DNA of 64,000 bases from IMGVR_UViG_3300044632_001003:124001-188000; one strand, 5' to 3'. Positions 2,345 through 64,000 are shown, numbered from the stretch's first letter. The notes: a model not told the origin generated them from the sequence alone. Made by a program: numbers and translations.

Positions 2345-3367
2345 ATGGTAGTTAAGCCCTGGGAAGTCCAACGAAGCTCAACAACAAGTAACCCACCATC
2401 TTCTTCTGCTGGGTCATCTGCCCCAGCTAAGCCAGATAAACAGCAAGCTCAAAAATCCAATAAGAAGACAGCATATAGATATCCATTTGATAGAATTGAT
2501 GATGGTGATGACTACTTATTAATAGAAGTTATTGATTTTGTTCCTGGTGGATTACAAAGACAAGGTGCCGAGTCTTTAGCATTAGTTACAACAGATCAAA
2601 CTCTAGCAAAAAACAAGCAAAAAGTACTTAGTCGAATTATTTTACCTATTCCAGAAGGTGTTGGAGATACCAATAATGCAGACTGGTCAAATAGTAACGT
2701 AAATCCATTTGATGCTACTTTGATTGGAGCATTCAATCAATTTTTGGGACAATCTGCTGGGGGAAATCTTCCAGGTGCTTTTGGTGACATGGCTAAAAAT
2801 CTTGCTGGTTCTGGATCTGCTTTAGCACTATCTGCAGAAGGAGGAAAGGCATTTATGGCATCAATGTCTGCTAAAGCAGCCGCAGCGATAACAGGAAATG
2901 CTAACGCCCAGGGACTAATTAATAGAGCACTTGGTGCAACATTAAACCCAAATAGCCAACTCTTATTTAACAGTGTGGCTCAAAGATCTTTTGGATTTAG
3001 TTGGGACTTAGTTCCAAGGTCTAAAAAGGAATCGGATGAAGTAAAAAATATAATAAGAATATTTAAATCCTACATGTCTGCAAGAAAAGGTGCTCAGGCT
3101 CAACCAGGTGGTGGATTCTTTATTGGGTCTCCAAGTGTATTCCAATTAACTTACATGACAGGTCAAAAACCACATGCATTTTTGAACCAGTTCAAACCAA
3201 TGGCATTAACTGGGATGTCAGTTAATTATACAGGATCTGGAACTTATGCAACATATGGTGATTCAACACCAGTTCATATGCAATTAACACTTAATATGAG
3301 CGAACTTACACCAATTTATGCTGAAGATTATGATACAAAAGAAGGAAAAGATGGAGTAGGATACTAA
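2345..3367 (+). CDS. gp48: Baseplate tail tube cap gp48
   Basis: NPNSQLLF..V..RSFGFSWDLVPRSKKES...P.VFQLTY; synteny. Confidence 0.85.
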   Translation: MVVKPWEVQRSSTTSNPPSSSAGSSAPAKPDKQQAQKSNKKTAYRYPFDRIDDGDDYLLIEVIDFVPGGLQRQGAESLALVTTDQTLAKNKQKVLSRIILPIPEGVGDTNNADWSNSNVNPFDATLIGAFNQFLGQSAGGNLPGAFGDMAKNLAGSGSALALSAEGGKAFMASMSAKAAAAITGNANAQGLINRALGATLNPNSQLLFNSVAQRSFGFSWDLVPRSKKESDEVKNIIRIFKSYMSARKGAQAQPGGGFFIGSPSVFQLTYMTGQKPHAFLNQFKPMALTGMSVNYTGSGTYATYGDSTPVHMQLTLNMSELTPIYAEDYDTKEGKDGVGY

Positions 3368-3368
3368 G

Positions 3369-4025
3369 ATGGCATACTTTAGAGAACTACCAGATTTAGA
3401 ATATCAATCACCATTCTCGGATAGAAACTCTTCATTAGATTATGTAAGGGCAAAAAATATCTTTAGAAGAGTAAAAATCAGAGACGACTTACAGAAAGTT
3501 TTTACAATATTCAACAAATATACCATTTCTGATGGTGCAAGACCTGATACAGTTGCAGAGGCACTATATGGAAAGTCAGAATTTGACTGGGTTGTACTCA
3601 TCAGTGCTGGGATAGTTAATGTAAGAGATGAGTGGCCACTCTCAAACTATGATTTGTACAATTACAGTTATGAAAAATATGGAGATAATCTCAATGACAC
3701 TAAATTTTATGAAACAATAGAAGTCAGAGATCCTAATGGAAGATTAATTCTCCCTGCTGGAAAAGTTGTTGATGCTAACTTTACAATTCCAGACCCAGCG
3801 AATAAAGTTCAAAATTTACAACAATCTAAAGTTGTTGTAGCAATTAATAATTATGAATATGAAGTTCGTAAGAATGAGGCAAAAAGAAACATTTATGTAT
3901 TAAAATCAGAATACTTACCAAGTTTCTTAACTGATATTAGAAAGATTATGACATATACAGAATCATCTCAATTTATTGATTCTAAGTTAATTAAGGCATC
4001 TAATACTAGAATCAAGTCACCATAA
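3369..4025 (+). CDS. gp53: Baseplate wedge subunit gp53
   Basis: MAYFRELPDLEY...RPDTVAEALYGKSEFDWVVL. Confidence 0.9.
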   Translation: MAYFRELPDLEYQSPFSDRNSSLDYVRAKNIFRRVKIRDDLQKVFTIFNKYTISDGARPDTVAEALYGKSEFDWVVLISAGIVNVRDEWPLSNYDLYNYSYEKYGDNLNDTKFYETIEVRDPNGRLILPAGKVVDANFTIPDPANKVQNLQQSKVVVAINNYEYEVRKNEAKRNIYVLKSEYLPSFLTDIRKIMTYTESSQFIDSKLIKASNTRIKSP

Positions 4026-38686: not shown

Positions 38687-39769
38687 TCAACCAATCGCAG
38701 GAGCAGTCAAGGCAACAGGAGTTGCTTCGGCAGCAGCGAGGTCCAGAGGAAAGTTATGGGCGTTTCTCTCATGCATCACTTCCATTCCGAGTCCAGCACG
38801 GTTCAGGACATCTGCCCAAGTGTTGAGCACACGACCCTGACTATCCAGGATACTCTGATTGAAATTCAGTCCGTTGAGATTAAAAGCCATCGTGGAAACA
38901 CCAAGAGCGGTGAACCAGATGCCTACAACAGGCCAGGCAGCAAGGAAGAAGTGCAGCGAACGTGAGTTATTGAACGAAGCATATTGGAAAATAAGGCGTC
39001 CAAAGTAACCGTGAGCAGCAACGATGTTATAGGTCTCTTCTTCTTGACCAAACTTGTAACCATAGTTCTGGGACTCGTTCTCAGTGGTTTCACGAACCAG
39101 CGAGGAAGTAACCAGAGAACCGTGCATTGCACTGAACAGAGAACCACCGAAGACACCAGCAACTCCAAGCATATGGAAGGGGTGCATCAGGATGTTGTGC
39201 TCTGCCTGGAACACAAGCATGTAGTTGAAAGTACCAGAGATACCCAGAGGCATCGCATCAGAGAACGAACCTTGACCGAAAGGATAGACCAGGAACACTG
39301 CACTCGCAGCAGCAACAGGTGCGCTATAAGCAACACAGATCCATGGACGCATACCAAGACGGTAGGAAAGTTCCCACTCACGACCCATATAAGCATAGAT
39401 ACCGATCAGGAAGTGGAACACAACCAGTTGGAAAGGACCACCGTTGTAAAGCCACTCATCTAGGGAAGCAGCTTCCCAGATGGGGTAAAAGTGCAGTCCA
39501 ATAGCATTGGACGAAGGAATCACAGCACCAGAGATGATGTTGTTTCCGTACATGAGTGAACCAGCAACGGGTTCACGGATACCATCGATATCCACAGGGG
39601 GAGCACCGATGAATGCGATGATGAAGCAAGTCGTAGCAGCAAGCAGACAGGGAATCATCAGAACGCCAAACCAACCCACATAGAGGCGGTTATCGGTTGA
39701 AGTAACCCAGTTGCAGAACTGTTCCCAAATATTCGATTGTGATTTTTGACGTGAAAGAGTAGCAGTCAT
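38687..39769 (-). CDS. psbA: Photosystem II D1 protein (E130, intronless)
   Basis: [13 protein letters not shown]...GREWELSY...[13 protein letters not shown]. Confidence 0.99.
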
Positions 39770-39789: not shown

Positions 39790-39890
39790 GACCATCAGGG
39801 AAATGGTGGAGATACTATGCTCCCCGCACCCTTAGCGGGGATATGAGAGACGTAATTTATACACCCATAGGTCTCGGTTAGCGGGTGTTG
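39790..39890 (-). ncRNA. PhotoRC-II-like structured psbA leader RNA
   Basis: GAGAC/GTCTC stem crossing TATGGG/CTCATA stem; CCCCGC/GCGGGG hairpin; 5' of phage psbA. Confidence 0.65.
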
Positions 39891-39930
39891 CAAACATTAA
39901 GGATTTGTTACATTCTTTAACGTGTTGATG

Positions 39931-59358: not shown

Positions 59359-59780
59359 TCGTCCTCTTTAAATACGTAGGTTTTTCCATCTTCAACGATG
59401 TTTGAATCTTCATCATCGTCTTTATTTGACCATTCTACCACAATAGTATCCTCCAATGCAATACGCATATGCATCAAACCAGGAGGAATATGAAATACAT
59501 CTCCTGCTTCTAAAATGATAGATTTATTTTTGGCACGACCAATTCTCATACCAACTTTAAGTTTTCCAGATTGAATATAATAATATTCATCTTTAGTGAC
59601 GTGATACTCCATACTACTTTGAGTACCCGCTTTCATAAAGACTTCTTTTAAGGTAAAGTCATCAGTAGCAAATACGGTAGTGATGTATCCCCAATACTTC
59701 TCTCTTTTTTCTTCACACTTAAGTACAAGAGGAAGTTCTTGCCTCCCGTAACTATTGTCCGTAGTATTTGTTGATTCCAT
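59355..59780 (-). CDS. Cupin (mannose-6-phosphate isomerase type 2-like)
   Basis: KYWG, SMEYH..KDEYY, HIPPGLMHMR. Confidence 0.8.
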   Translation of the reverse strand: MESTNTTDNSYGRQELPLVLKCEEKREKYWGYITTVFATDDFTLKEVFMKAGTQSSMEYHVTKDEYYYIQSGKLKVGMRIGRAKNKSIILEAGDVFHIPPGLMHMRIALEDTIVVEWSNKDDDEDSNIVEDGKTYVFKEDE

Positions 59781-60444
59781 TCTTTCGTTCAAAATGTTTT
59801 TTATACAAGTCTCTACTCAATCTACATGGTTGAATATGTGGATTGATTGAGGTGGTGTAGTAAGCCATTTCAGCAATTTCCTCTAACACTATAGCACATT
59901 CTAGTGTTCTTTTAGATGAATCTGAGAATACCATAACACCATGCCCAGGCAAAAGGATGGCAGGTATGTTAAGTGGATTTATTTTCTTAGATTGATAAAA
60001 ATCAACTACGCACTGTCCCAGATTCTTTTCATATTCATCAAGTTCAAACTTTTCTAGTTGTCTAGCAACTGGAATATCAGATAGAAAGTAATCGGCGTGA
60101 GTTGTCCCTAAAATAGGAATTGGTTTAAGTGCCTGTGCCCATGAAGTTGCAAACTTTGAATGACTATGAATAACTGATTTAATCTCTGGAAATGCCTTAT
60201 AAATTTCCAAATGAATTGCTGTATCGACAGAGGGTTTCATACCAGAAATTAATTTTCCAGTATAAAGTTCGACAATACAAAGTTGGCTAAACGTAAGTTT
60301 ATCAAACTCAATCCCAGAAGGTTTAATAACAATATGCTTACCATCTTCAGTAAGCACACTGGCATTTCCCCAAGTTAGTTTGACTAAACTGTTTTCCTTT
60401 AAACTTTTGTTCAGAGATAAACAATCTTCAATTGCCTTATTCAT
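59752..60444 (-). CDS. araD: L-ribulose-5-phosphate 4-epimerase-like class II aldolase
   Basis: TWGNAS, IKPSG, KPSVDTAIH, HSHS, GTTHADYF, HG. Confidence 0.88.
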   Translation of the reverse strand: MNKAIEDCLSLNKSLKENSLVKLTWGNASVLTEDGKHIVIKPSGIEFDKLTFSQLCIVELYTGKLISGMKPSVDTAIHLEIYKAFPEIKSVIHSHSKFATSWAQALKPIPILGTTHADYFLSDIPVARQLEKFELDEYEKNLGQCVVDFYQSKKINPLNIPAILLPGHGVMVFSDSSKRTLECAIVLEEIAEMAYYTTSINPHIQPCRLSRDLYKKHFERKNGINKYYGQ

Positions 60445-61213
60445 GTAATGGTTTAGATACAAATTCAGCGGCGACTTGGTTAGCAAAAACTGGGTCACCA
60501 GTTGCTAGAAGAGCTGCATAAAAACAATCTCCTGCACCAATAGTATTTACCACATTTTCCACAGGCGTTGCTGGATAATTAACACCGTTCATCATGCAAC
60601 CATCTGCACCTTTTGTTACACAGATATTTGTTACCCGATCTACGTGTTTTGCTTCCTCTTGATTACAGACTAAGTAATCAACCGCCCAATACCTATCATA
60701 GTTTGATGTCTTACTCGATACCTGAGAAGAGGCATATGTAATTTTTCCAGAATCAGTTGCATGTTTGATGAATGATTCTGTAATAAATCCACAACGGTAA
60801 TCAGCAAAAGCAATGATATCAAACTCATCAATATCAAAATTTTCTAAGAACGATTTTGAAAACTCATTATTGACATCATTAACTTGTAGATGATTGTATC
60901 GACTATCTCCATGATTAACCCAGTATCTTGTTTTAGTATTATTACGACCCTGGAAAAAACTTTTTACTGGGAGATCATAATGCAACTCAAAAGTATCACA
61001 GTCTTTATCAGACATTGATGTTGCAAATGTTACGTCTCTACCAAATCCACGAAGAAACTTGGCAACATTAGCAGCGCCACCAAAATCATAACTGTGCTCT
61101 TCAATTACCGTTTTGATTGTTGGAGACTCTAGTGATAGTCCGATTGCCCTAAGTTCTAGAGTTTCATCAATGATGGTATCACCAACAATTAGATACTTTA
61201 AATTTTCTCGCAT
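60437..61213 (-). CDS. PfkB-family sugar kinase (HldE kinase-like)
   Basis: VGDTIID, GGAANVA, VTKGADG, IGAGD. Confidence 0.85.
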   Translation of the reverse strand: MRENLKYLIVGDTIIDETLELRAIGLSLESPTIKTVIEEHSYDFGGAANVAKFLRGFGRDVTFATSMSDKDCDTFELHYDLPVKSFFQGRNNTKTRYWVNHGDSRYNHLQVNDVNNEFSKSFLENFDIDEFDIIAFADYRCGFITESFIKHATDSGKITYASSQVSSKTSNYDRYWAVDYLVCNQEEAKHVDRVTNICVTKGADGCMMNGVNYPATPVENVVNTIGAGDCFYAALLATGDPVFANQVAAEFVSKPLHE

Positions 61214-62058
61214 GTTTCAAGTTCTCTAATTTTTTGCATGGTATTGGTTGTGGAATAGTCTCCAACCAAAGGATAAACTTTAACTTGTATAGACTCTGGA
61301 ATACAGTCTCTGCTTCTTACTTCATCAGCAGTCCATTCAGAACCCTTAACAATTACATCTGGAGAGAGTGTTTGATAGAATTCTTGAAGTTCTTCAGTTG
61401 AATCAAAAATGATGACTTCATCAACATAACGATTTGTCTCAAGAACCCTTCTACGATCTTCTTCATTATTAACAGGTCGATTGTCACCTTTGAGTTGTTT
61501 TACTCTGCGGTCAGAATCAATAGCAACAATCAGTTTTGTTCCCTGCAATCTAGCAAACTTCAAAAGTTCAATATGGCCCTTATGAAGGATATCAAAAACT
61601 CCATTTGTTAAAACAATGCCAGTATGTGAATCAATCTTTTCAACACGCTTGACATGACGACCTTCTCCCCATGCTTCATCTAACCACATTTTGCTCATCT
61701 CTCTCATTTCAATCTGAGAAGACAACCACGTACCCAAACAAAGAACATTGGAATCATTATGCTCTCTAGACTTAACCGCAGTGAGTTCATTATGAGCTAG
61801 AACAGCACGGACACCAGCAAAACGATTTGCAACGATACTCATACCAACACCAGTTCCACAGATAAGGATACCTCGGTCCGCCTCACGATTACTCACAATT
61901 GTAGATAACTGAGCTGCATAATCAACATAATCGACACTCACATCAGAAGTATAAGGTCCAATATCAATAACCCGATATCCTTCTCCCTTAAGATACATCT
62001 TTAGTTGTTCTTTGTTCTCGACCCCATTATGGTCAGAAGAAATAATGATCGTTTTCAT
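61198..62058 (-). CDS. RpiB/LacAB isomerase fused to a HldE-type nucleotidyltransferase
   Basis: SDH.G, DYVDYA, CGTGVGM, HNDSNVL; then GVFDILHKGH, KGSEW. Confidence 0.88.
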   Translation of the reverse strand: MKTIIISSDHNGVENKEQLKMYLKGEGYRVIDIGPYTSDVSVDYVDYAAQLSTIVSNREADRGILICGTGVGMSIVANRFAGVRAVLAHNELTAVKSREHNDSNVLCLGTWLSSQIEMREMSKMWLDEAWGEGRHVKRVEKIDSHTGIVLTNGVFDILHKGHIELLKFARLQGTKLIVAIDSDRRVKQLKGDNRPVNNEEDRRRVLETNRYVDEVIIFDSTEELQEFYQTLSPDVIVKGSEWTADEVRSRDCIPESIQVKVYPLVGDYSTTNTMQKIRELETCEKI

Positions 62059-62855
62059 AGAAATTCAAAGTTACCAAATGGATAATCAACTGTTGATTTA
62101 TTATAGCATTCTCCACCAAACCAATTTTTGGGGGCAATTACTTTTTTACTTTTTGCTAACCATGCACCCCACCAAGAGAATGATGAATTTGCAATGATGT
62201 GATAATCGCATAATGACATTAAGCAAAGATCAGCATCGGTTGTGTTTTCTTCTGATATCAAAAACCTATCATCTTTAAATAAATCCTGCTCTTTACACCA
62301 AGATTCATCATCAGAAAAAACAATAACAGGAAGTTCTGGTAGTTTAGAAAGTGCTTCCTGATAATAACTAATTGGTTGCACAGGATGATTTGGATTAGAG
62401 GTATAATCTCCTCTACGAATATGTAAAGAGATTACTTCACTATCAAAATTTTCTTTAAGAAATTCTTTACAATTAGAATACAACTCTTCATTAAATCTAA
62501 AGTCTTCTCGTATCTCATCTTCAATATGCTTGAAGTATTTTTCGGTTTGAAAGTATCCCATTAAATCTACATTATCTGGGCAATTGATGAATAATTCCTC
62601 ATCAAATTCATGCTTTCTTTCCCAAAAAGTATTGGCATCCTGTAGAGCACAATCATTATTTTTTTCTATATTTTCAAAAACATCGTATAAAATAACATCA
62701 GAATTTTTGACATTATCATCATGCTGCCCAAAAACATATCTAGGTGGAATGATAAATCCATATCCCCTATTTCTAGCAATTCCTTTTAAAGAAGCATATT
62801 GAAACATTTGATTGGCAAGTCTTCCAAGATTGCCAATATGATTGAGTGATATCAT
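62055..62855 (-). CDS. Alpha-1,2-fucosyltransferase (GT11)
   Basis: GRLANQMFQYA, GYFQ, HIRRGDY, VFSDD, NSSFSWWGA. Confidence 0.93.
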   Translation of the reverse strand: MISLNHIGNLGRLANQMFQYASLKGIARNRGYGFIIPPRYVFGQHDDNVKNSDVILYDVFENIEKNNDCALQDANTFWERKHEFDEELFINCPDNVDLMGYFQTEKYFKHIEDEIREDFRFNEELYSNCKEFLKENFDSEVISLHIRRGDYTSNPNHPVQPISYYQEALSKLPELPVIVFSDDESWCKEQDLFKDDRFLISEENTTDADLCLMSLCDYHIIANSSFSWWGAWLAKSKKVIAPKNWFGGECYNKSTVDYPFGNFEFL

Positions 62856-63439
62856 ACTTTATAATTAAATGAAATAGTAACTCTTGGATCAGTATTAAGA
62901 CCAGGAGGAACCATATGAACAGTGGATGATTGAAAAATTAACAAAGAACGTTCAACTGGTTCTATAGAATATGAATCTGAATTATACTCATTTCTGATAG
63001 AATGTGGGGTACAGTAATAAAAATTAGGATGGTGAAATACTATAGGTGCAGATCCCTCTGGTCTTTTACAGAAATATACTCCACTAATAGAAGATGGTAA
63101 ATGATGATGAAACTCTTGACTGTTTTTATTAGTATAAACATTCCACCACCACTCACTTAAAAAGAATTTATGATGGTCACAATTTAAAAATTTTGCGTAT
63201 TCATTAACTTTAGTATTGATTCTTTCAAATAGTAAGTCAAAAATTTTATTCTCATACCCAATATTAAATGAATTTTGTGGGCTATTTGCTCCCGAATACC
63301 AGGAGTCTATCCCTCTACCTTTAACAACATCCTTTTCTTTTAGAATGTGTTGATATATTCTCATATTTTCTTCTTCAGAAATGAGATCGTATGACCGATA
63401 AACTGAAGTTGGAAACAATAAATGAATATTATCCTGCAC
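62852..63439 (-). CDS. 2OG-Fe(II) oxygenase (TIGR02466-like)
   Basis: LFPT, WWN, HHH..S.ISGVYF, H.V, RVTISFN; probable GTG start. Confidence 0.8.
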   Translation of the reverse strand: MQDNIHLLFPTSVYRSYDLISEEENMRIYQHILKEKDVVKGRGIDSWYSGANSPQNSFNIGYENKIFDLLFERINTKVNEYAKFLNCDHHKFFLSEWWWNVYTNKNSQEFHHHLPSSISGVYFCKRPEGSAPIVFHHPNFYYCTPHSIRNEYNSDSYSIEPVERSLLIFQSSTVHMVPPGLNTDPRVTISFNYKV

Positions 63440-63463
63440 AAATATATCACAATATATCAAATT

Positions 63464-63498
63464 ATTATAATAAAAAAGGGAGTTGTTGTCAACTCCCT
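63464..63498 (-). promoter_or_regulatory. Terminator + consensus sigma70 promoter for the sugar island
   Basis: GGGAGTTG-ACAA-CAACTCCC-T6; TTGACA-17-TATAAT. Confidence 0.85.
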
Positions 63499-63508
63499 TG
63501 ATTCTTTT

Positions 63509-63893
63509 CAGGCTCGCCACCAATTCTTTGACTGGAAATTGGAAACCAGGCGGGAGAGAGTCCCATCCGCACCACTTGCTTTTTTATGGGAAAGCAAGAA
63601 ACCAGAAGGGGTCAAATTTGACTCCACCACTTGGTTTTAAGAAACCAAGAAAAGTTGGGTTAACTTTGATATTTCGGTGATACCAAAGAATGCTATCAGA
63701 AATAGCACATCCCAGAGTTTGAGTTTGATAGCAAAAGGAATACCGAGTAGTCCCCCAATAAACTTTATTATCAAACCATTTTTGAAATCTCCCCACAACA
63801 TGATTTGATAACCAAGTAGGAGAAGAAAGTTCCCGATATACCTCAGGATACTTGTTTTAGACATAAGGGGTTTGCTCCCGACCAGTGCTGTTA
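63509..63893 (-). ncRNA. manA/wcaG-like cyanophage structured RNA
   Basis: Three TTTC-hairpin-GTGGYG units; 5' CACTGGTCGGGAGCAAACCCC; ACTGG complementary to loop CCAGT. Exact Rfam family uncertain. Confidence 0.6.
63637..63864 (-). CDS. 75-aa membrane protein inside the structured RNA
   Basis: Hydrophobic segments throughout; stop lies in the TTGGTTT/AACCAA hairpin loop. Confidence 0.65.
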   Translation of the reverse strand: MSKTSILRYIGNFLLLLGYQIMLWGDFKNGLIIKFIGGLLGIPFAIKLKLWDVLFLIAFFGITEISKLTQLFLVS

Positions 63894-64000
63894 TAGACCA
63901 TCCGTGTCTTCTTCATCGTCTCTTACATAACAAGGAACTCTATCTGGATCTAACCATTTCGCATACTCAATATCCTCCATTGCAGTAGAACATTGTAGAA
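63891..64000 (-). CDS. 3' end of a hypothetical protein (truncated by the window edge)
   Basis: LQCSTAMEDIEYAKWLDPDRVPCYVRDDEEDTDGL*. Confidence 0.65.
   Translation of the reverse strand, partial: LQCSTAMEDIEYAKWLDPDRVPCYVRDDEEDTDGL

What the first reader, a model, noticed from the sequence alone, without database searches (positions are those of the whole stretch)
63509..63893. manA/wcaG-like RNA with three repeated units and a membrane-protein gene inside it
Seen on -: CAGCACTGGTCGGGAGCAAACCCCTT, then immediately the ATG of a 75-aa hydrophobic ORF whose stop lies in the loop of the first of three TTTC-hairpin-GTGGYG units. The last loop has CCAGT (63531-35), complementary to the 5' ACTGG (63882-86), a possible pseudoknot spanning ~350 nt including the ORF. 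A terminator-promoter hybrid follows, then the manA/wcaG-type sugar genes. Established: manA and wcaG motifs are cyanophage RNAs of unknown function found upstream of such genes. Inference: a third case in this window of a small gene housed in a variable loop of a conserved RNA, suggesting a general cyanophage strategy.
Basis: partly seen in the sequence, partly recalled or inferred. Interest (0 to 1): 0.7.

Follow-up and report, generated by a model that had tools for sequence, protein, structure and literature searches.

The report
Split wcaG RNA array hosting a gene
A known cyanophage RNA (wcaG) turns out here to be the last part of a longer chain of four small RNA modules that a real 75-residue membrane-protein gene has split in two, but the long-range knot proposed to close the RNA around that gene is not supported.

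Summary
The sequence features are real. Rfam places a full-length wcaG RNA (RF01761, 100.7 bits) at 63506-63606 (-). There is no manA match. The 75-aa ORF (63637-63864) is a conserved phage gene under purifying selection. A terminator with an embedded sigma-70 promoter follows, which is a PeSL-type element. New here: wcaG is the 3' half of a four-module array. Each module is a small hairpin or pseudoknot, then an invariant (C/G)UGGYSG, then a G-rich hairpin. Both are tightly linked to wcaG in 112 loci. Twenty distinct relatives carry U0-U1-wcaG contiguously, so the ORF sits in a 210-nt block inserted between modules. Other relatives hold different small genes at these junctions. In some the array is an ORF-less RNA between a tRNA and the terminator. 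The proposed ACTGG/CCAGT pseudoknot fails: the loop pairs with the CUGG next to it. That local pairing is kept in all 15 variant sequences; the long-range one in 6. The array looks like the 3' part of an early operon rather than a leader for the sugar genes. Function is unknown. A multi-site protein-binding RNA is my best guess.

The parts
63891..64000 (-). 3' part of gene B (84 aa in full, phrog_481, unknown function). Its last codons and its stop codon are encoded by the U0 hairpin.
   Evidence: The C-terminal tail varies among homologues and has low pLDDT.
63867..63909 (-). Module U0: hairpin AGAC-ACGGAUG-GUCU (63895-63909), linker AUAACAGCA holding gene B's stop, CUGGUCG (63879-63885), then the small G-rich hairpin GGGAGCAAACCCC.
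   Evidence: Sequence. Identical U0 sits directly in front of U1 in L094, L170 and L158. CTGGTCGG lies within -400..+250 of the wcaG core in 90 of its 100 sense-strand occurrences. The hairpin stem covaries.
63637..63864 (-). ORF75: a 75-aa hydrophobic protein with three hydrophobic segments (phrog_2318, DUF6552-like). A real gene.
   Evidence: phrog_2318 at E 5.6e-21. 574 synonymous versus 108 non-synonymous codon changes. Atlas feature score 0.92 to DUF6552 clusters.
63653..63862 (-). The ~210-nt block that is present here and absent from relatives with a contiguous array. It holds ORF75 codons 1-70; the last codons and the stop are supplied by module U1.
   Evidence: BLAST of L136, L147, L094 and L170 against the window's own genome. 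Positions of CTGGTCG at about -305 versus about -95.
63608..63652 (-). Module U1: UUUC, a 7-bp hairpin (loop CUUA containing the ORF75 stop), GUGGUGG, then the hairpin GGAGUCAAAUUUGACCCC.
   Evidence: Weak second wcaG match of 24.6 bits. [CG]TGGTGGAGTC lies near wcaG in 89 of 92 occurrences.
63506..63606 (-). wcaG RNA (RF01761), full length. It comprises module U2 (P1 unit 63570-63601, GUGGUGCGG, P2 hairpin about 63550-63569) and module U3 (P3 unit 63515-63545, GUGGCG, AGCCUG tail).
   Evidence: 100.7 bits against a gathering score of 42, model positions 1-98. P1, P2 and P3 are recovered with compensatory changes.
63532..63549 (-). Local H-type pseudoknot: CUGG (63546-63549) pairs with CCAG (63532-63535) in the P3 loop.
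   Evidence: Eight flank/loop pair combinations are seen. Pairing is kept in all 15 variant-loop sequences. It is annotated as SS_cons_1 in the published alignment.
63464..63497 (-). Intrinsic terminator (GGGAGUUG-ACAA-CAACUCCC plus U6, 63472-63497) overlapped by a sigma-70 promoter (TTGACA 63487-63492, 17-nt spacer, TATAAT 63464-63469). This is a PeSL-type composite element.
   Evidence: Sequence. A terminator follows in 72 of 92 loci and a promoter overlaps it in at least 44. PeSL definition from PMC4122927.
62852..63439 (-). First downstream gene, a 2OG-Fe(II) oxygenase (GTG start), followed by sugar-metabolism genes.
   Evidence: PF13759 at E 3.7e-14 and phrog_81.

Best explanation
Shown: on the minus strand, window 63464-63909 holds a modular structured RNA array specific to cyanomyoviruses. 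Rfam's wcaG motif is only its 3' half. There are four modules: U0, U1, U2 (wcaG P1+P2) and U3 (wcaG P3, pseudoknot and tail). Each module has a small 5' hairpin or H-type pseudoknot, then an invariant (C/G)UGGYSG, then a G-rich hairpin. The array ends in an intrinsic terminator that carries a sigma-70 promoter (a PeSL). In this phage a 210-nt block encoding a real 75-aa membrane protein lies between U0 and U1. The stop codons of gene B and of ORF75 are supplied by the modules themselves. Modules fold locally, and the gene is not enclosed by a long-range helix. Consistent with the data: a perfect-consensus promoter lies about 0.9 kb upstream. Promoter, gene A, gene B, U0, ORF75, U1, wcaG and terminator would then form one transcript, which puts the array at the 3' end of an operon rather than in a 5' leader for the sugar genes. 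Inferred: the array works as an RNA in its own right. It most likely presents repeated UGGYG sites to a still unknown RNA-binding protein, as a sponge or scaffold, and may also stabilise the transcript. The small ORFs are passengers placed at module junctions by the cassette shuffling typical of T4-like hyperplastic regions.
For: wcaG match. Module linkage: CTGGTCGG lies near wcaG in 90 of 100 occurrences and [CG]TGGTGGAGTC in 89 of 92, across 915 kb from 112 loci. Twenty distinct contiguous arrays and a clean indel. Different small genes at the junctions. Module order swapped or the array extended in other loci. ORF-less arrays between a tRNA and the terminator. Local pairings covary. RNA contigs from four lake or aquatic metatranscriptomes cover only the promoter-to-terminator stretch, at word depths from a few tens (X3, X6) to hundreds or thousands (X1, X4), against about 0 on both flanks. 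They bridge gene B-U0-ORF75 and ORF75-U1-wcaG. Native aptamer/terminator duplexes are no better than permuted ones, at -8.37 versus -8.52 +/- 0.13 kcal/mol, and the spacer varies mostly from 4 to 20 nt. In 20 of 92 loci my simple scan found no terminator; tRNA genes or further modules follow instead. The published note on two UGGYG motifs suggests a dimeric protein site. wcaG was found in none of 121 host-family genomes.
Against: No binding protein has been identified. CsrA is absent from the phage and from 201 genomes of the host order. The model of the syntenic gene B has no recognisable nucleic-acid-binding fold; the best Z is 4.8. The RNA depth comes from assembled contigs pooled over related phages, so the sharp edges could partly reflect where relatives stop being similar rather than where transcripts end. 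In some relatives RNA contigs continue past wcaG into other sequence. Depth over wcaG is not higher than over the ORFs, so there is no sign of a separately accumulating small RNA. The frequent sugar-gene neighbourhood noted by Weinberg et al. is left unexplained, except as synteny.
Confidence: 0.5

Rival explanations
1. One reading: one large RNA of about 350 nt, closed by a pseudoknot between ACUGG (63882-63886) and the P3 loop CCAGU (63531-63535), with the gene housed in a variable loop.
For: The two 5-mers are complementary in this window. U0 does co-occur with wcaG in relatives.
Against: The P3 loop pairs with the CUGG immediately 5' of UUUC. That pairing is kept in all 15 variant-loop sequences through compensatory changes. 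The U0 pairing survives in only 6 of 15, never by Watson-Crick pairs alone, and the fifth pair forms in 43 of 82 sequences. The published alignment already annotates the local pseudoknot. No covarying pair between segments appears in the top 40 of the mutual-information scan. Module order can be swapped.
Confidence: 0.04
2. The published hypothesis: wcaG, possibly as tandem small aptamers, is a riboswitch. It senses a metabolite and controls termination at the following terminator, and so read-through into the exopolysaccharide or sugar genes.
For: Weinberg et al. 2010 rated it a probable riboswitch. Each module is a compact pseudoknot with invariant single-stranded bases, similar in size to small aptamers. 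An intrinsic terminator follows in 72 of 92 loci. Terminated transcripts with silent downstream genes would fit an OFF state.
Against: The downstream genes have their own consensus promoter inside the terminator. There is no co-adapted alternative pairing between aptamer and terminator, and the spacer varies mostly from 4 to 20 nt. In 20 of 92 loci no terminator was detected, and tRNA genes or more modules follow. Module number and order vary, and translated ORFs sit between modules. Here the 'leader' would be a three-gene operon.
Confidence: 0.2
3. The modules act only in cis, as RNA punctuation or stability elements. They would be structured barriers or processing sites at cistron and tRNA boundaries that protect the early transcript from exonucleases or direct its cleavage, with no trans-acting role.
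For: Modules sit exactly at gene ends, with stop codons inside them, and directly after tRNA 3' ends. The transcript carrying them is abundant. The array ends in a terminator hairpin.
Against: Simple stabilisers rarely need invariant single-stranded motifs such as UGGYSG, UUUC and AAAG together with covarying pseudoknots. There is one array per genome, not one per operon. No read-end pile-ups were reported, although the data are contigs.
Confidence: 0.2
4. The conserved modules matter mainly at the DNA level, as short homology blocks like PeSLs that mediate recombinational shuffling of small gene cassettes. The RNA structures would be incidental.
For: Different small ORFs occupy the junctions, and module order varies. 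PeSLs are proposed to act this way in T4-like phages.
Against: Stems and pseudoknots are kept by compensatory and G-U changes, which selects for RNA pairing. The arrays are conserved where no ORF is present.
Confidence: 0.06

Closest known systems
wcaG RNA motif (Rfam RF01761; Weinberg et al. 2010, PMC2864571)
   Same: 63506-63606 is a full-length, high-scoring member with P1, P2, P3, the local pseudoknot and two UGGYG motifs. It lies in a T4-like cyanophage with sugar genes downstream.
   Different: The conserved element extends about 100 nt further 5' by two more UGGYSG modules, which this gene has split apart. Here it lies at the 3' end of an upstream operon, in front of a terminator and promoter, and not in a plain 5' UTR.
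PeSL composite terminator/promoter elements of T4-like phages (Arbiol et al. 2010, PMC2839356; Comeau et al. 2014, PMC4122927)
   Same: A stem-loop terminator is fused to a sigma-70-type early promoter in a variable region. Small ORFs of unknown function that differ between relatives flank it.
   Different: PeSLs were described in enterobacterial and Vibrio T4-like phages. In this case the -35 box sits in the terminator loop, and the element is consistently coupled to a structured RNA array.
Multi-site protein-sequestering RNAs (CsrB/RsmZ type), as a functional analogy only
   Same: Tandem structured modules present a short invariant motif, and their number and order vary. The U0 hairpin loop ACGGAUG resembles the A(N)GGA loop sites, which I am recalling from memory.
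   Different: No CsrA was found in the phage or in 201 genomes of the host order. The invariant motif is UGGYSG next to pseudoknots, not GGA loops alone. There is no binding evidence.
manA RNA motif (RF01745)
   Same: It is also a cyanophage RNA, it contains a GUGGUG element, and in S-CREM1 it lies in the same tRNA region as wcaG.
   Different: It is a different 192-nt fold, and nothing in this window matches it even at E<=10.
Stable small RNAs of the T4 tRNA gene cluster (species 1 and 2), from my own knowledge and not tested
   Same: In relatives the array is an ORF-less RNA gene placed directly after or between tRNA genes in a T4-like phage.
   Different: Sequence or structural similarity was not examined. 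In this window the nearest tRNA gene is about 1.2 kb upstream.

Membership tests
wcaG RNA (RF01761) | Covariance-model score above the gathering threshold over the whole model | tested here: met
   100.7 bits against 42, model positions 1-98 of 98, E 3.9e-18.
wcaG RNA (RF01761) | Three hairpins P1, P2 and P3 kept by compensatory changes | tested here: met
   RNAalifold recovers all three on 19 relatives, with both-sides changes in 7 pairs. P3 pairs top the mutual-information list.
wcaG RNA (RF01761) | Pseudoknot between the bases 5' of P3 and the P3 loop (SS_cons_1 of the published alignment) | tested here: met
   CUGG 63546-63549 pairs with CCAG 63532-63535. Eight flank/loop combinations are seen among relatives.
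wcaG RNA (RF01761) | Two conserved UGGYG motifs | tested here: met
   GUGGUGCGG and GUGGCG are invariant. Two further copies lie upstream.
wcaG RNA (RF01761) | Position in the 5' UTR of the downstream (exopolysaccharide or high-light) gene, which is the basis of the 'cis-regulatory' label | tested here: not met
   An intrinsic terminator and a separate consensus promoter lie between it and the next gene. RNA contigs cover the upstream operon plus wcaG but not the downstream genes. This bears on the functional label, not on membership by sequence and structure.
manA RNA (RF01745) | Covariance-model match | tested here: not met
   No match at E<=10 in 63300-64000. The model does detect manA in S-CREM1 at 96.6 bits.
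Riboswitch | Expression platform whose structure competes with the aptamer | tested here: inconclusive
   Native aptamer/terminator duplex energies are no better than permuted ones, and the spacer varies mostly from 4 to 20 nt. This is indirect evidence only.
Riboswitch | Specific binding of a small ligand | not testable with these tools
   Needs in-line probing or ITC.
PeSL (composite terminator/promoter of T4-like phages) | Stem-loop terminator fused to a sigma-70-type early promoter | tested here: met
   63464-63497. The same layout follows wcaG in at least 44 of 92 loci. Definition.
PeSL (composite terminator/promoter of T4-like phages) | Association with insertion, deletion or replacement of small ORFs between close relatives | tested here: met
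   ORF75 is present or absent, and other ORFs occupy the junctions.
CsrB/RsmZ-type protein sponge | Cognate CsrA/RsmA protein in host or phage | tested here: not met
   PF02599 was not found in the phage or in 201 genomes of the host order. The controls rang in 3 of 14 genomes.

The most novel reading that the evidence does not exclude
wcaG is not a cis-acting leader. It is the core of a longer, modular, phage-made non-coding RNA of 4-6 pseudoknot-UGGYG modules. The RNA is produced early, either as a stand-alone product flanked by a tRNA and a terminator or with small genes nested between its modules. It would bind and redirect a host or phage RNA-binding protein during infection, and the nested genes would exploit the expression and stability of their RNA host.
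Probability: 0.3. Interest if true: 0.7.

Novelty: new variant of a known kind. Interest (0 to 1): 0.5.

Why it matters
wcaG has been an orphan 'riboswitch candidate' since 2010, and genome papers annotate it as a cis-regulator of exopolysaccharide genes. These results change what should be tested. The unit to test is about twice as long as the Rfam model. It tolerates whole genes between its modules. It often stands alone next to tRNA genes. In this phage it ends an abundant upstream transcript instead of leading the sugar genes. That shifts the search from a metabolite ligand towards a protein partner or an RNA-stability role. It also identifies two cultured phages, S-SRM01 and S-CREM1, with filled and empty versions for direct experiments. 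Finally, it adds a case of protein-coding ends (gene B tail, ORF75 tail, both stop codons) being dictated by RNA structure.

Tried and rejected
1. manA membership: no match even at E<=10.
2. Long-range ACUGG/CCAGU pseudoknot: rejected by comparison. No inter-segment covariation appeared in the top 40 pairs of the mutual-information scan. RNAalifold proposed a 3-bp contact between GUC of CUGGUCG and GGC of GUGGCG, but all six columns are invariant or nearly so, so it carries no support.
3. A P1 pseudoknot analogous to the P3 one: flank and loop triplets look matched (GAG/CUC, AGG/CCU, UGG/CCA). My 4-mer test was not better than shuffled flanks, with 31 observed against a mean of 26 and a maximum of 37. 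Left open.
4. Co-adapted antiterminator pairing: none detected.
5. CsrA as the partner, prompted by the ACGGAUG loop: CsrA was not found in the phage or in 201 host-order genomes.
6. Gene B as a nucleic-acid-binding protein: the AlphaFold model is good (pLDDT 83), but Foldseek found nothing at E<0.2 and VIA-align's best Z was 4.8. The faint PUR/PC4/integrase-arm rows are not significant.
7. Atlas searches for gene A and gene B returned only viral hypothetical clusters.
8. Other copies of the modules in this genome: the extra CTGGTCG and TGGTGGAGTC hits lie in coding sequence and lack the module context.
9. Literature: no functional study of wcaG since 2010 turned up.
10. I did not run the count of structure pairs or build a covariance model of the extended array, because that needs long typed structure strings. 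The pair counts were done in Python instead.

Full report
**Observation.** I read the minus strand of window 62800-64000. The segment CAGCACTGGTCGGGAGCAAACCCCTT lies at 63890-63865. The ATG of a 75-aa ORF follows directly (63864-63637). Three TTTC-hairpin-GTGGYG units lie at 63625-63652, 63570-63601 and 63515-63545. They are the only clustered instances of that pattern with a stem of 4 bp or more in the 205-kb genome. Twenty shuffled genomes gave 0.15 hits per genome. The ORF's TAA (63639-63637) sits at the loop edge of the first unit. A hairpin followed by six T's (63472-63497) carries TTGACA in its loop region, then a 17-nt spacer, then TATAAT (63464-63469).

**Which known RNA it is.** Rfam at gathering thresholds gives one full-length wcaG match (RF01761) at 63506-63606, with 100.7 bits against a threshold of 42. 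A permissive scan of 63300-64000 (E<=10) adds only a weak partial wcaG match over the first unit (24.6 bits) and no manA match. The manA model does work: it finds manA in phage S-CREM1 at 96.6 bits. That RNA is a different 192-nt fold which merely contains a GUGGUG loop.

The published description (Weinberg et al. 2010, PMC2864571) calls wcaG a probable cis-regulatory RNA and riboswitch candidate of marine metagenomes and T4-like cyanophages. It notes two UGGYG motifs as a possible dimeric-protein site. Its alignment annotates a covarying pseudoknot between the bases just 5' of P3 and the P3 loop. I found no later functional work.

**The ORF is a gene.**
- It matches phrog_2318 end to end at E 5.6e-21.
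- Over 37 distinct relatives, differences fall 163, 19 and 558 on codon positions 1, 2 and 3. Codon changes are 574 synonymous against 108 non-synonymous.
- It has no Pfam hit. By language-model features it resembles DUF6552 clusters of viral small membrane proteins, with a score of 0.92.

**Genome context.**
- The window is G000:C1:124001-188000 of a 205-kb cyanomyovirus with a single wcaG.
- The window also holds PhotoRC-II and psbA. The psbA is closest to freshwater Cyanobium and Synechococcus, at 93-94% identity.
- Upstream on the same strand lie a consensus promoter (TTGACA, 17 nt, TATAAT), gene A (71 aa, phrog_552) and gene B (84 aa, phrog_481).
- Downstream lie a 2OG-Fe(II) oxygenase, a GT11 glycosyltransferase, an RpiB-cytidylyltransferase fusion, a PfkB kinase and a class II aldolase.

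**The array is longer than wcaG.** I fetched 80 loci through ORF75 and 120 loci through the wcaG core 16-mer, independently of the ORF. Two further modules recur upstream of wcaG.
- U0 is a short hairpin, an A-rich linker, CUGGUCG and a small G-rich hairpin.
- U1 is either a UUUC hairpin or a second hairpin of the U0 kind, then (C/G)UGGUGG and the hairpin GGAGUCA...UGACCC.
- In 915 kb from 112 distinct wcaG loci, CTGGTCGG occurs 100 times on the sense strand, 90 of them within -400..+250 of the wcaG core. [CG]TGGTGGAGTC occurs 92 times, 89 of them there. The antisense strand has 5 and 0.
- In this genome both motifs occur with module context only here.

Its hairpin AGAC-ACGGAUG-GUCU encodes the last residues of gene B. 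The linker supplies gene B's stop codon.

**Empty and filled sites.**
- Of 92 distinct loci found through the wcaG core, 39 have an ORF75 homologue. In those, CTGGTCG sits at -303 to -317 from the core.
- In at least 15 ORF-less loci it sits at -91 to -103, directly in front of U1.
- Twenty distinct contiguous U0-U1-wcaG arrays are listed. L094, L170 and L158 share this window's U0 sequence exactly.
- BLAST of such relatives against this genome shows homology up to the ORF75 ATG that resumes at the U1 UUUC. This defines a block of about 210 nt (63653-63862) that is present here and absent there. The last five codons and the stop of ORF75 are read from U1.
- Other relatives carry other small genes at the junctions. 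A coiled-coil protein (phrog_35121) or an unassigned 70-aa protein lies between U1 and wcaG. A DUF2061-like membrane protein lies between U0 and wcaG. Sometimes ORF75 and a second ORF are both present.
- Module order can be swapped, and extra modules can follow P3.
- In several loci U0 begins right after a tRNA gene. There the roughly 240 nt to the terminator hold no conserved ORF, so the array is a stand-alone RNA gene.
- The cultured phages S-SRM01 (filled site) and S-CREM1 (empty site, swapped order, tRNAs around) show the same design.

**The proposed long-range pseudoknot.**
- Across relatives, the four bases 5' of the P3 UUUC and the first four loop bases change together. The combinations seen are CUGG/CCAG, CUAG/CUAG, CCUG/CAGG, CAGG/CCUG, UCUG/CAGG, CGAG/CUCG, UCAG/CUGG and CCAG/CUGG.
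- Of 82 distinct sequences carrying U0, 15 have a variant loop. The local pairing is kept in all 15: 13 in the automatic alignment, and the other two once the register is set as.
- The U0 pairing is kept in 6 of 15, never by Watson-Crick pairs alone. The fifth A-U pair forms in only 43 of 82.
- U0 was located by its CTGG, so a covarying U0 would have been missed. Even so, U0 is found unchanged in most variant-loop sequences, which is what breaks the pairing.
- An alignment-wide mutual-information scan puts only local pairs at the top (P3, the U0 hairpin stem, the switch between hairpin types). No Watson-Crick pair between segments appears there.
- The modules therefore fold locally, and the gene lies between modules rather than in a closed loop.

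**What follows the array.**
- An intrinsic terminator follows in 72 of 92 loci, with an overlapping -35/-10 pair in at least 44. This matches the composite terminator/promoter elements (PeSLs) of T4-like phages, which are linked to shuffling of small ORFs in hyperplastic regions (PMC2839356, PMC4122927).
- Native wcaG/terminator combinations pair no better than permuted ones (-8.37 against -8.52 +/- 0.13 kcal/mol). The spacer varies mostly from 4 to 20 nt. There is thus no sign of a riboswitch expression platform.
- In the 20 loci where my scan found no terminator, tRNA genes or further modules follow.

**RNA evidence.**
- I laid contigs of four lake or aquatic metatranscriptome runs on L202, where window coordinate = L202 coordinate + 62005.
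- Summed word depth is about 0 on L202 1-1456 (downstream genes) and above 2496 (upstream oxygenase).
- Between 1457 and about 2392 it reaches hundreds to thousands in runs X1 and X4. In X3 and X6 it reaches a few tens, and X3 is at 0 above about 2185. That stretch is exactly the promoter-to-terminator unit.
- Contigs bridge gene B-U0-ORF75 and ORF75-U1-wcaG.
- The silent flanks argue against DNA carry-over.
- Caveats: these are assembled contigs pooled over related phages, so the edges may partly mark where relatives diverge. Some relatives' RNA contigs run past wcaG into other sequence. Contigs have no strand.

**Search for a partner.**
- The U0 loop ACGGAUG recalls CsrA/RsmA sites, from my memory. 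CsrA was not found in the phage or in 201 genomes of the host order.
- wcaG was not found in 121 host-family genomes.
- Gene A and gene B precede the array in 69 and 68 of 92 loci.
- Gene B folds confidently into four strands and two helices (pLDDT 83), with a disordered tail that is the part encoded by U0. It has no significant structural match.

**Conclusion.** The wcaG identification, the ORF and the terminator-promoter element stand. The 5' segment does belong to the RNA element. The gene interrupts a modular array rather than filling a loop, and the long-range knot is not supported. The position of the array speaks against a simple leader for the sugar genes: it lies at the 3' end of an early-type operon, or free beside tRNA genes. 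Its repeated invariant motif and its variable module number point the same way. These features fit a protein-binding or stabilising RNA, but that role is inferred and not shown.

Noticed in passing
L001 (Synechococcus phage S-SRM01, MW015081.1) 3135-3362 and 3377-3583: The ORF75 homologue is not annotated in the GenBank record. The annotated hypothetical CDS QPX48260.1 (locus 3377-3583) lies over the wcaG RNA (3387-3484, 101.2 bits) and its terminator, so it is probably spurious.
   Followed up: partly
L203 (S-CREM1, OP535465.1) 1416-1630: The manA RNA lies flush between tRNA-Leu (ends 1414) and tRNA-Asn (starts 1630). tRNA processing would release it as a free RNA, which sits oddly with its 'cis-regulatory' label. 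An abiF RNA lies between the next two tRNAs.
   Followed up: no
window 63891-63915; homologues listed: Gene B's conserved core ends at ...WLDPDRVPCY(V/I)(K/R)D. The C-terminal tails differ (DEEDTDGL, DEDMESL, SVSSQN and others) and follow the sequence of the U0 hairpin. The tail has pLDDT of about 50. RNA structure appears to dictate the protein's end and its stop codon.
   Followed up: partly
L032, L037, L049 (downstream of ORF75): In these loci P1 of wcaG is replaced by a longer-loop hairpin. Its loop is complementary to the linker just 5' of UGGUG, with matching changes (GUCGG/CCGAC, GUUGG/CCAAC, GUCGU/ACGAC). This is a second kind of module pseudoknot.
   Followed up: no
window 39807-39900 (-) and 38687-39769 (-): A PhotoRC-II RNA (RF01717, 79.5 bits) lies directly upstream of a 360-aa psbA. 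The closest cellular relatives of that psbA are freshwater Cyanobium and Synechococcus (93-94%), which suggests a freshwater picocyanobacterial host.
   Followed up: partly
window 59752-62855 (-): The downstream operon encodes a GT11 glycosyltransferase, an RpiB/LacAB isomerase fused to a cytidylyltransferase-like domain, a PfkB kinase and a class II aldolase. This is an unusual sugar-activation set for a phage.
   Followed up: no
window 63464-63492 and L202 ~2376-2393 (genome ~188,381-188,398): Both promoters are perfect TTGACA-17-TATAAT consensus. Yet RNA contig depth differs by more than 100-fold between the transcript of the upstream one and the genes behind the downstream one. The cause could be infection timing, mRNA stability, or divergence among the relatives pooled in the data.
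   Followed up: no
L202 1500 (window ~63505), runs X3 and X6: RNA contigs from relatives match only the wcaG core and continue 133-192 nt downstream into unrelated sequence without a terminator. In some phages wcaG is therefore co-transcribed with what follows.
   Followed up: no
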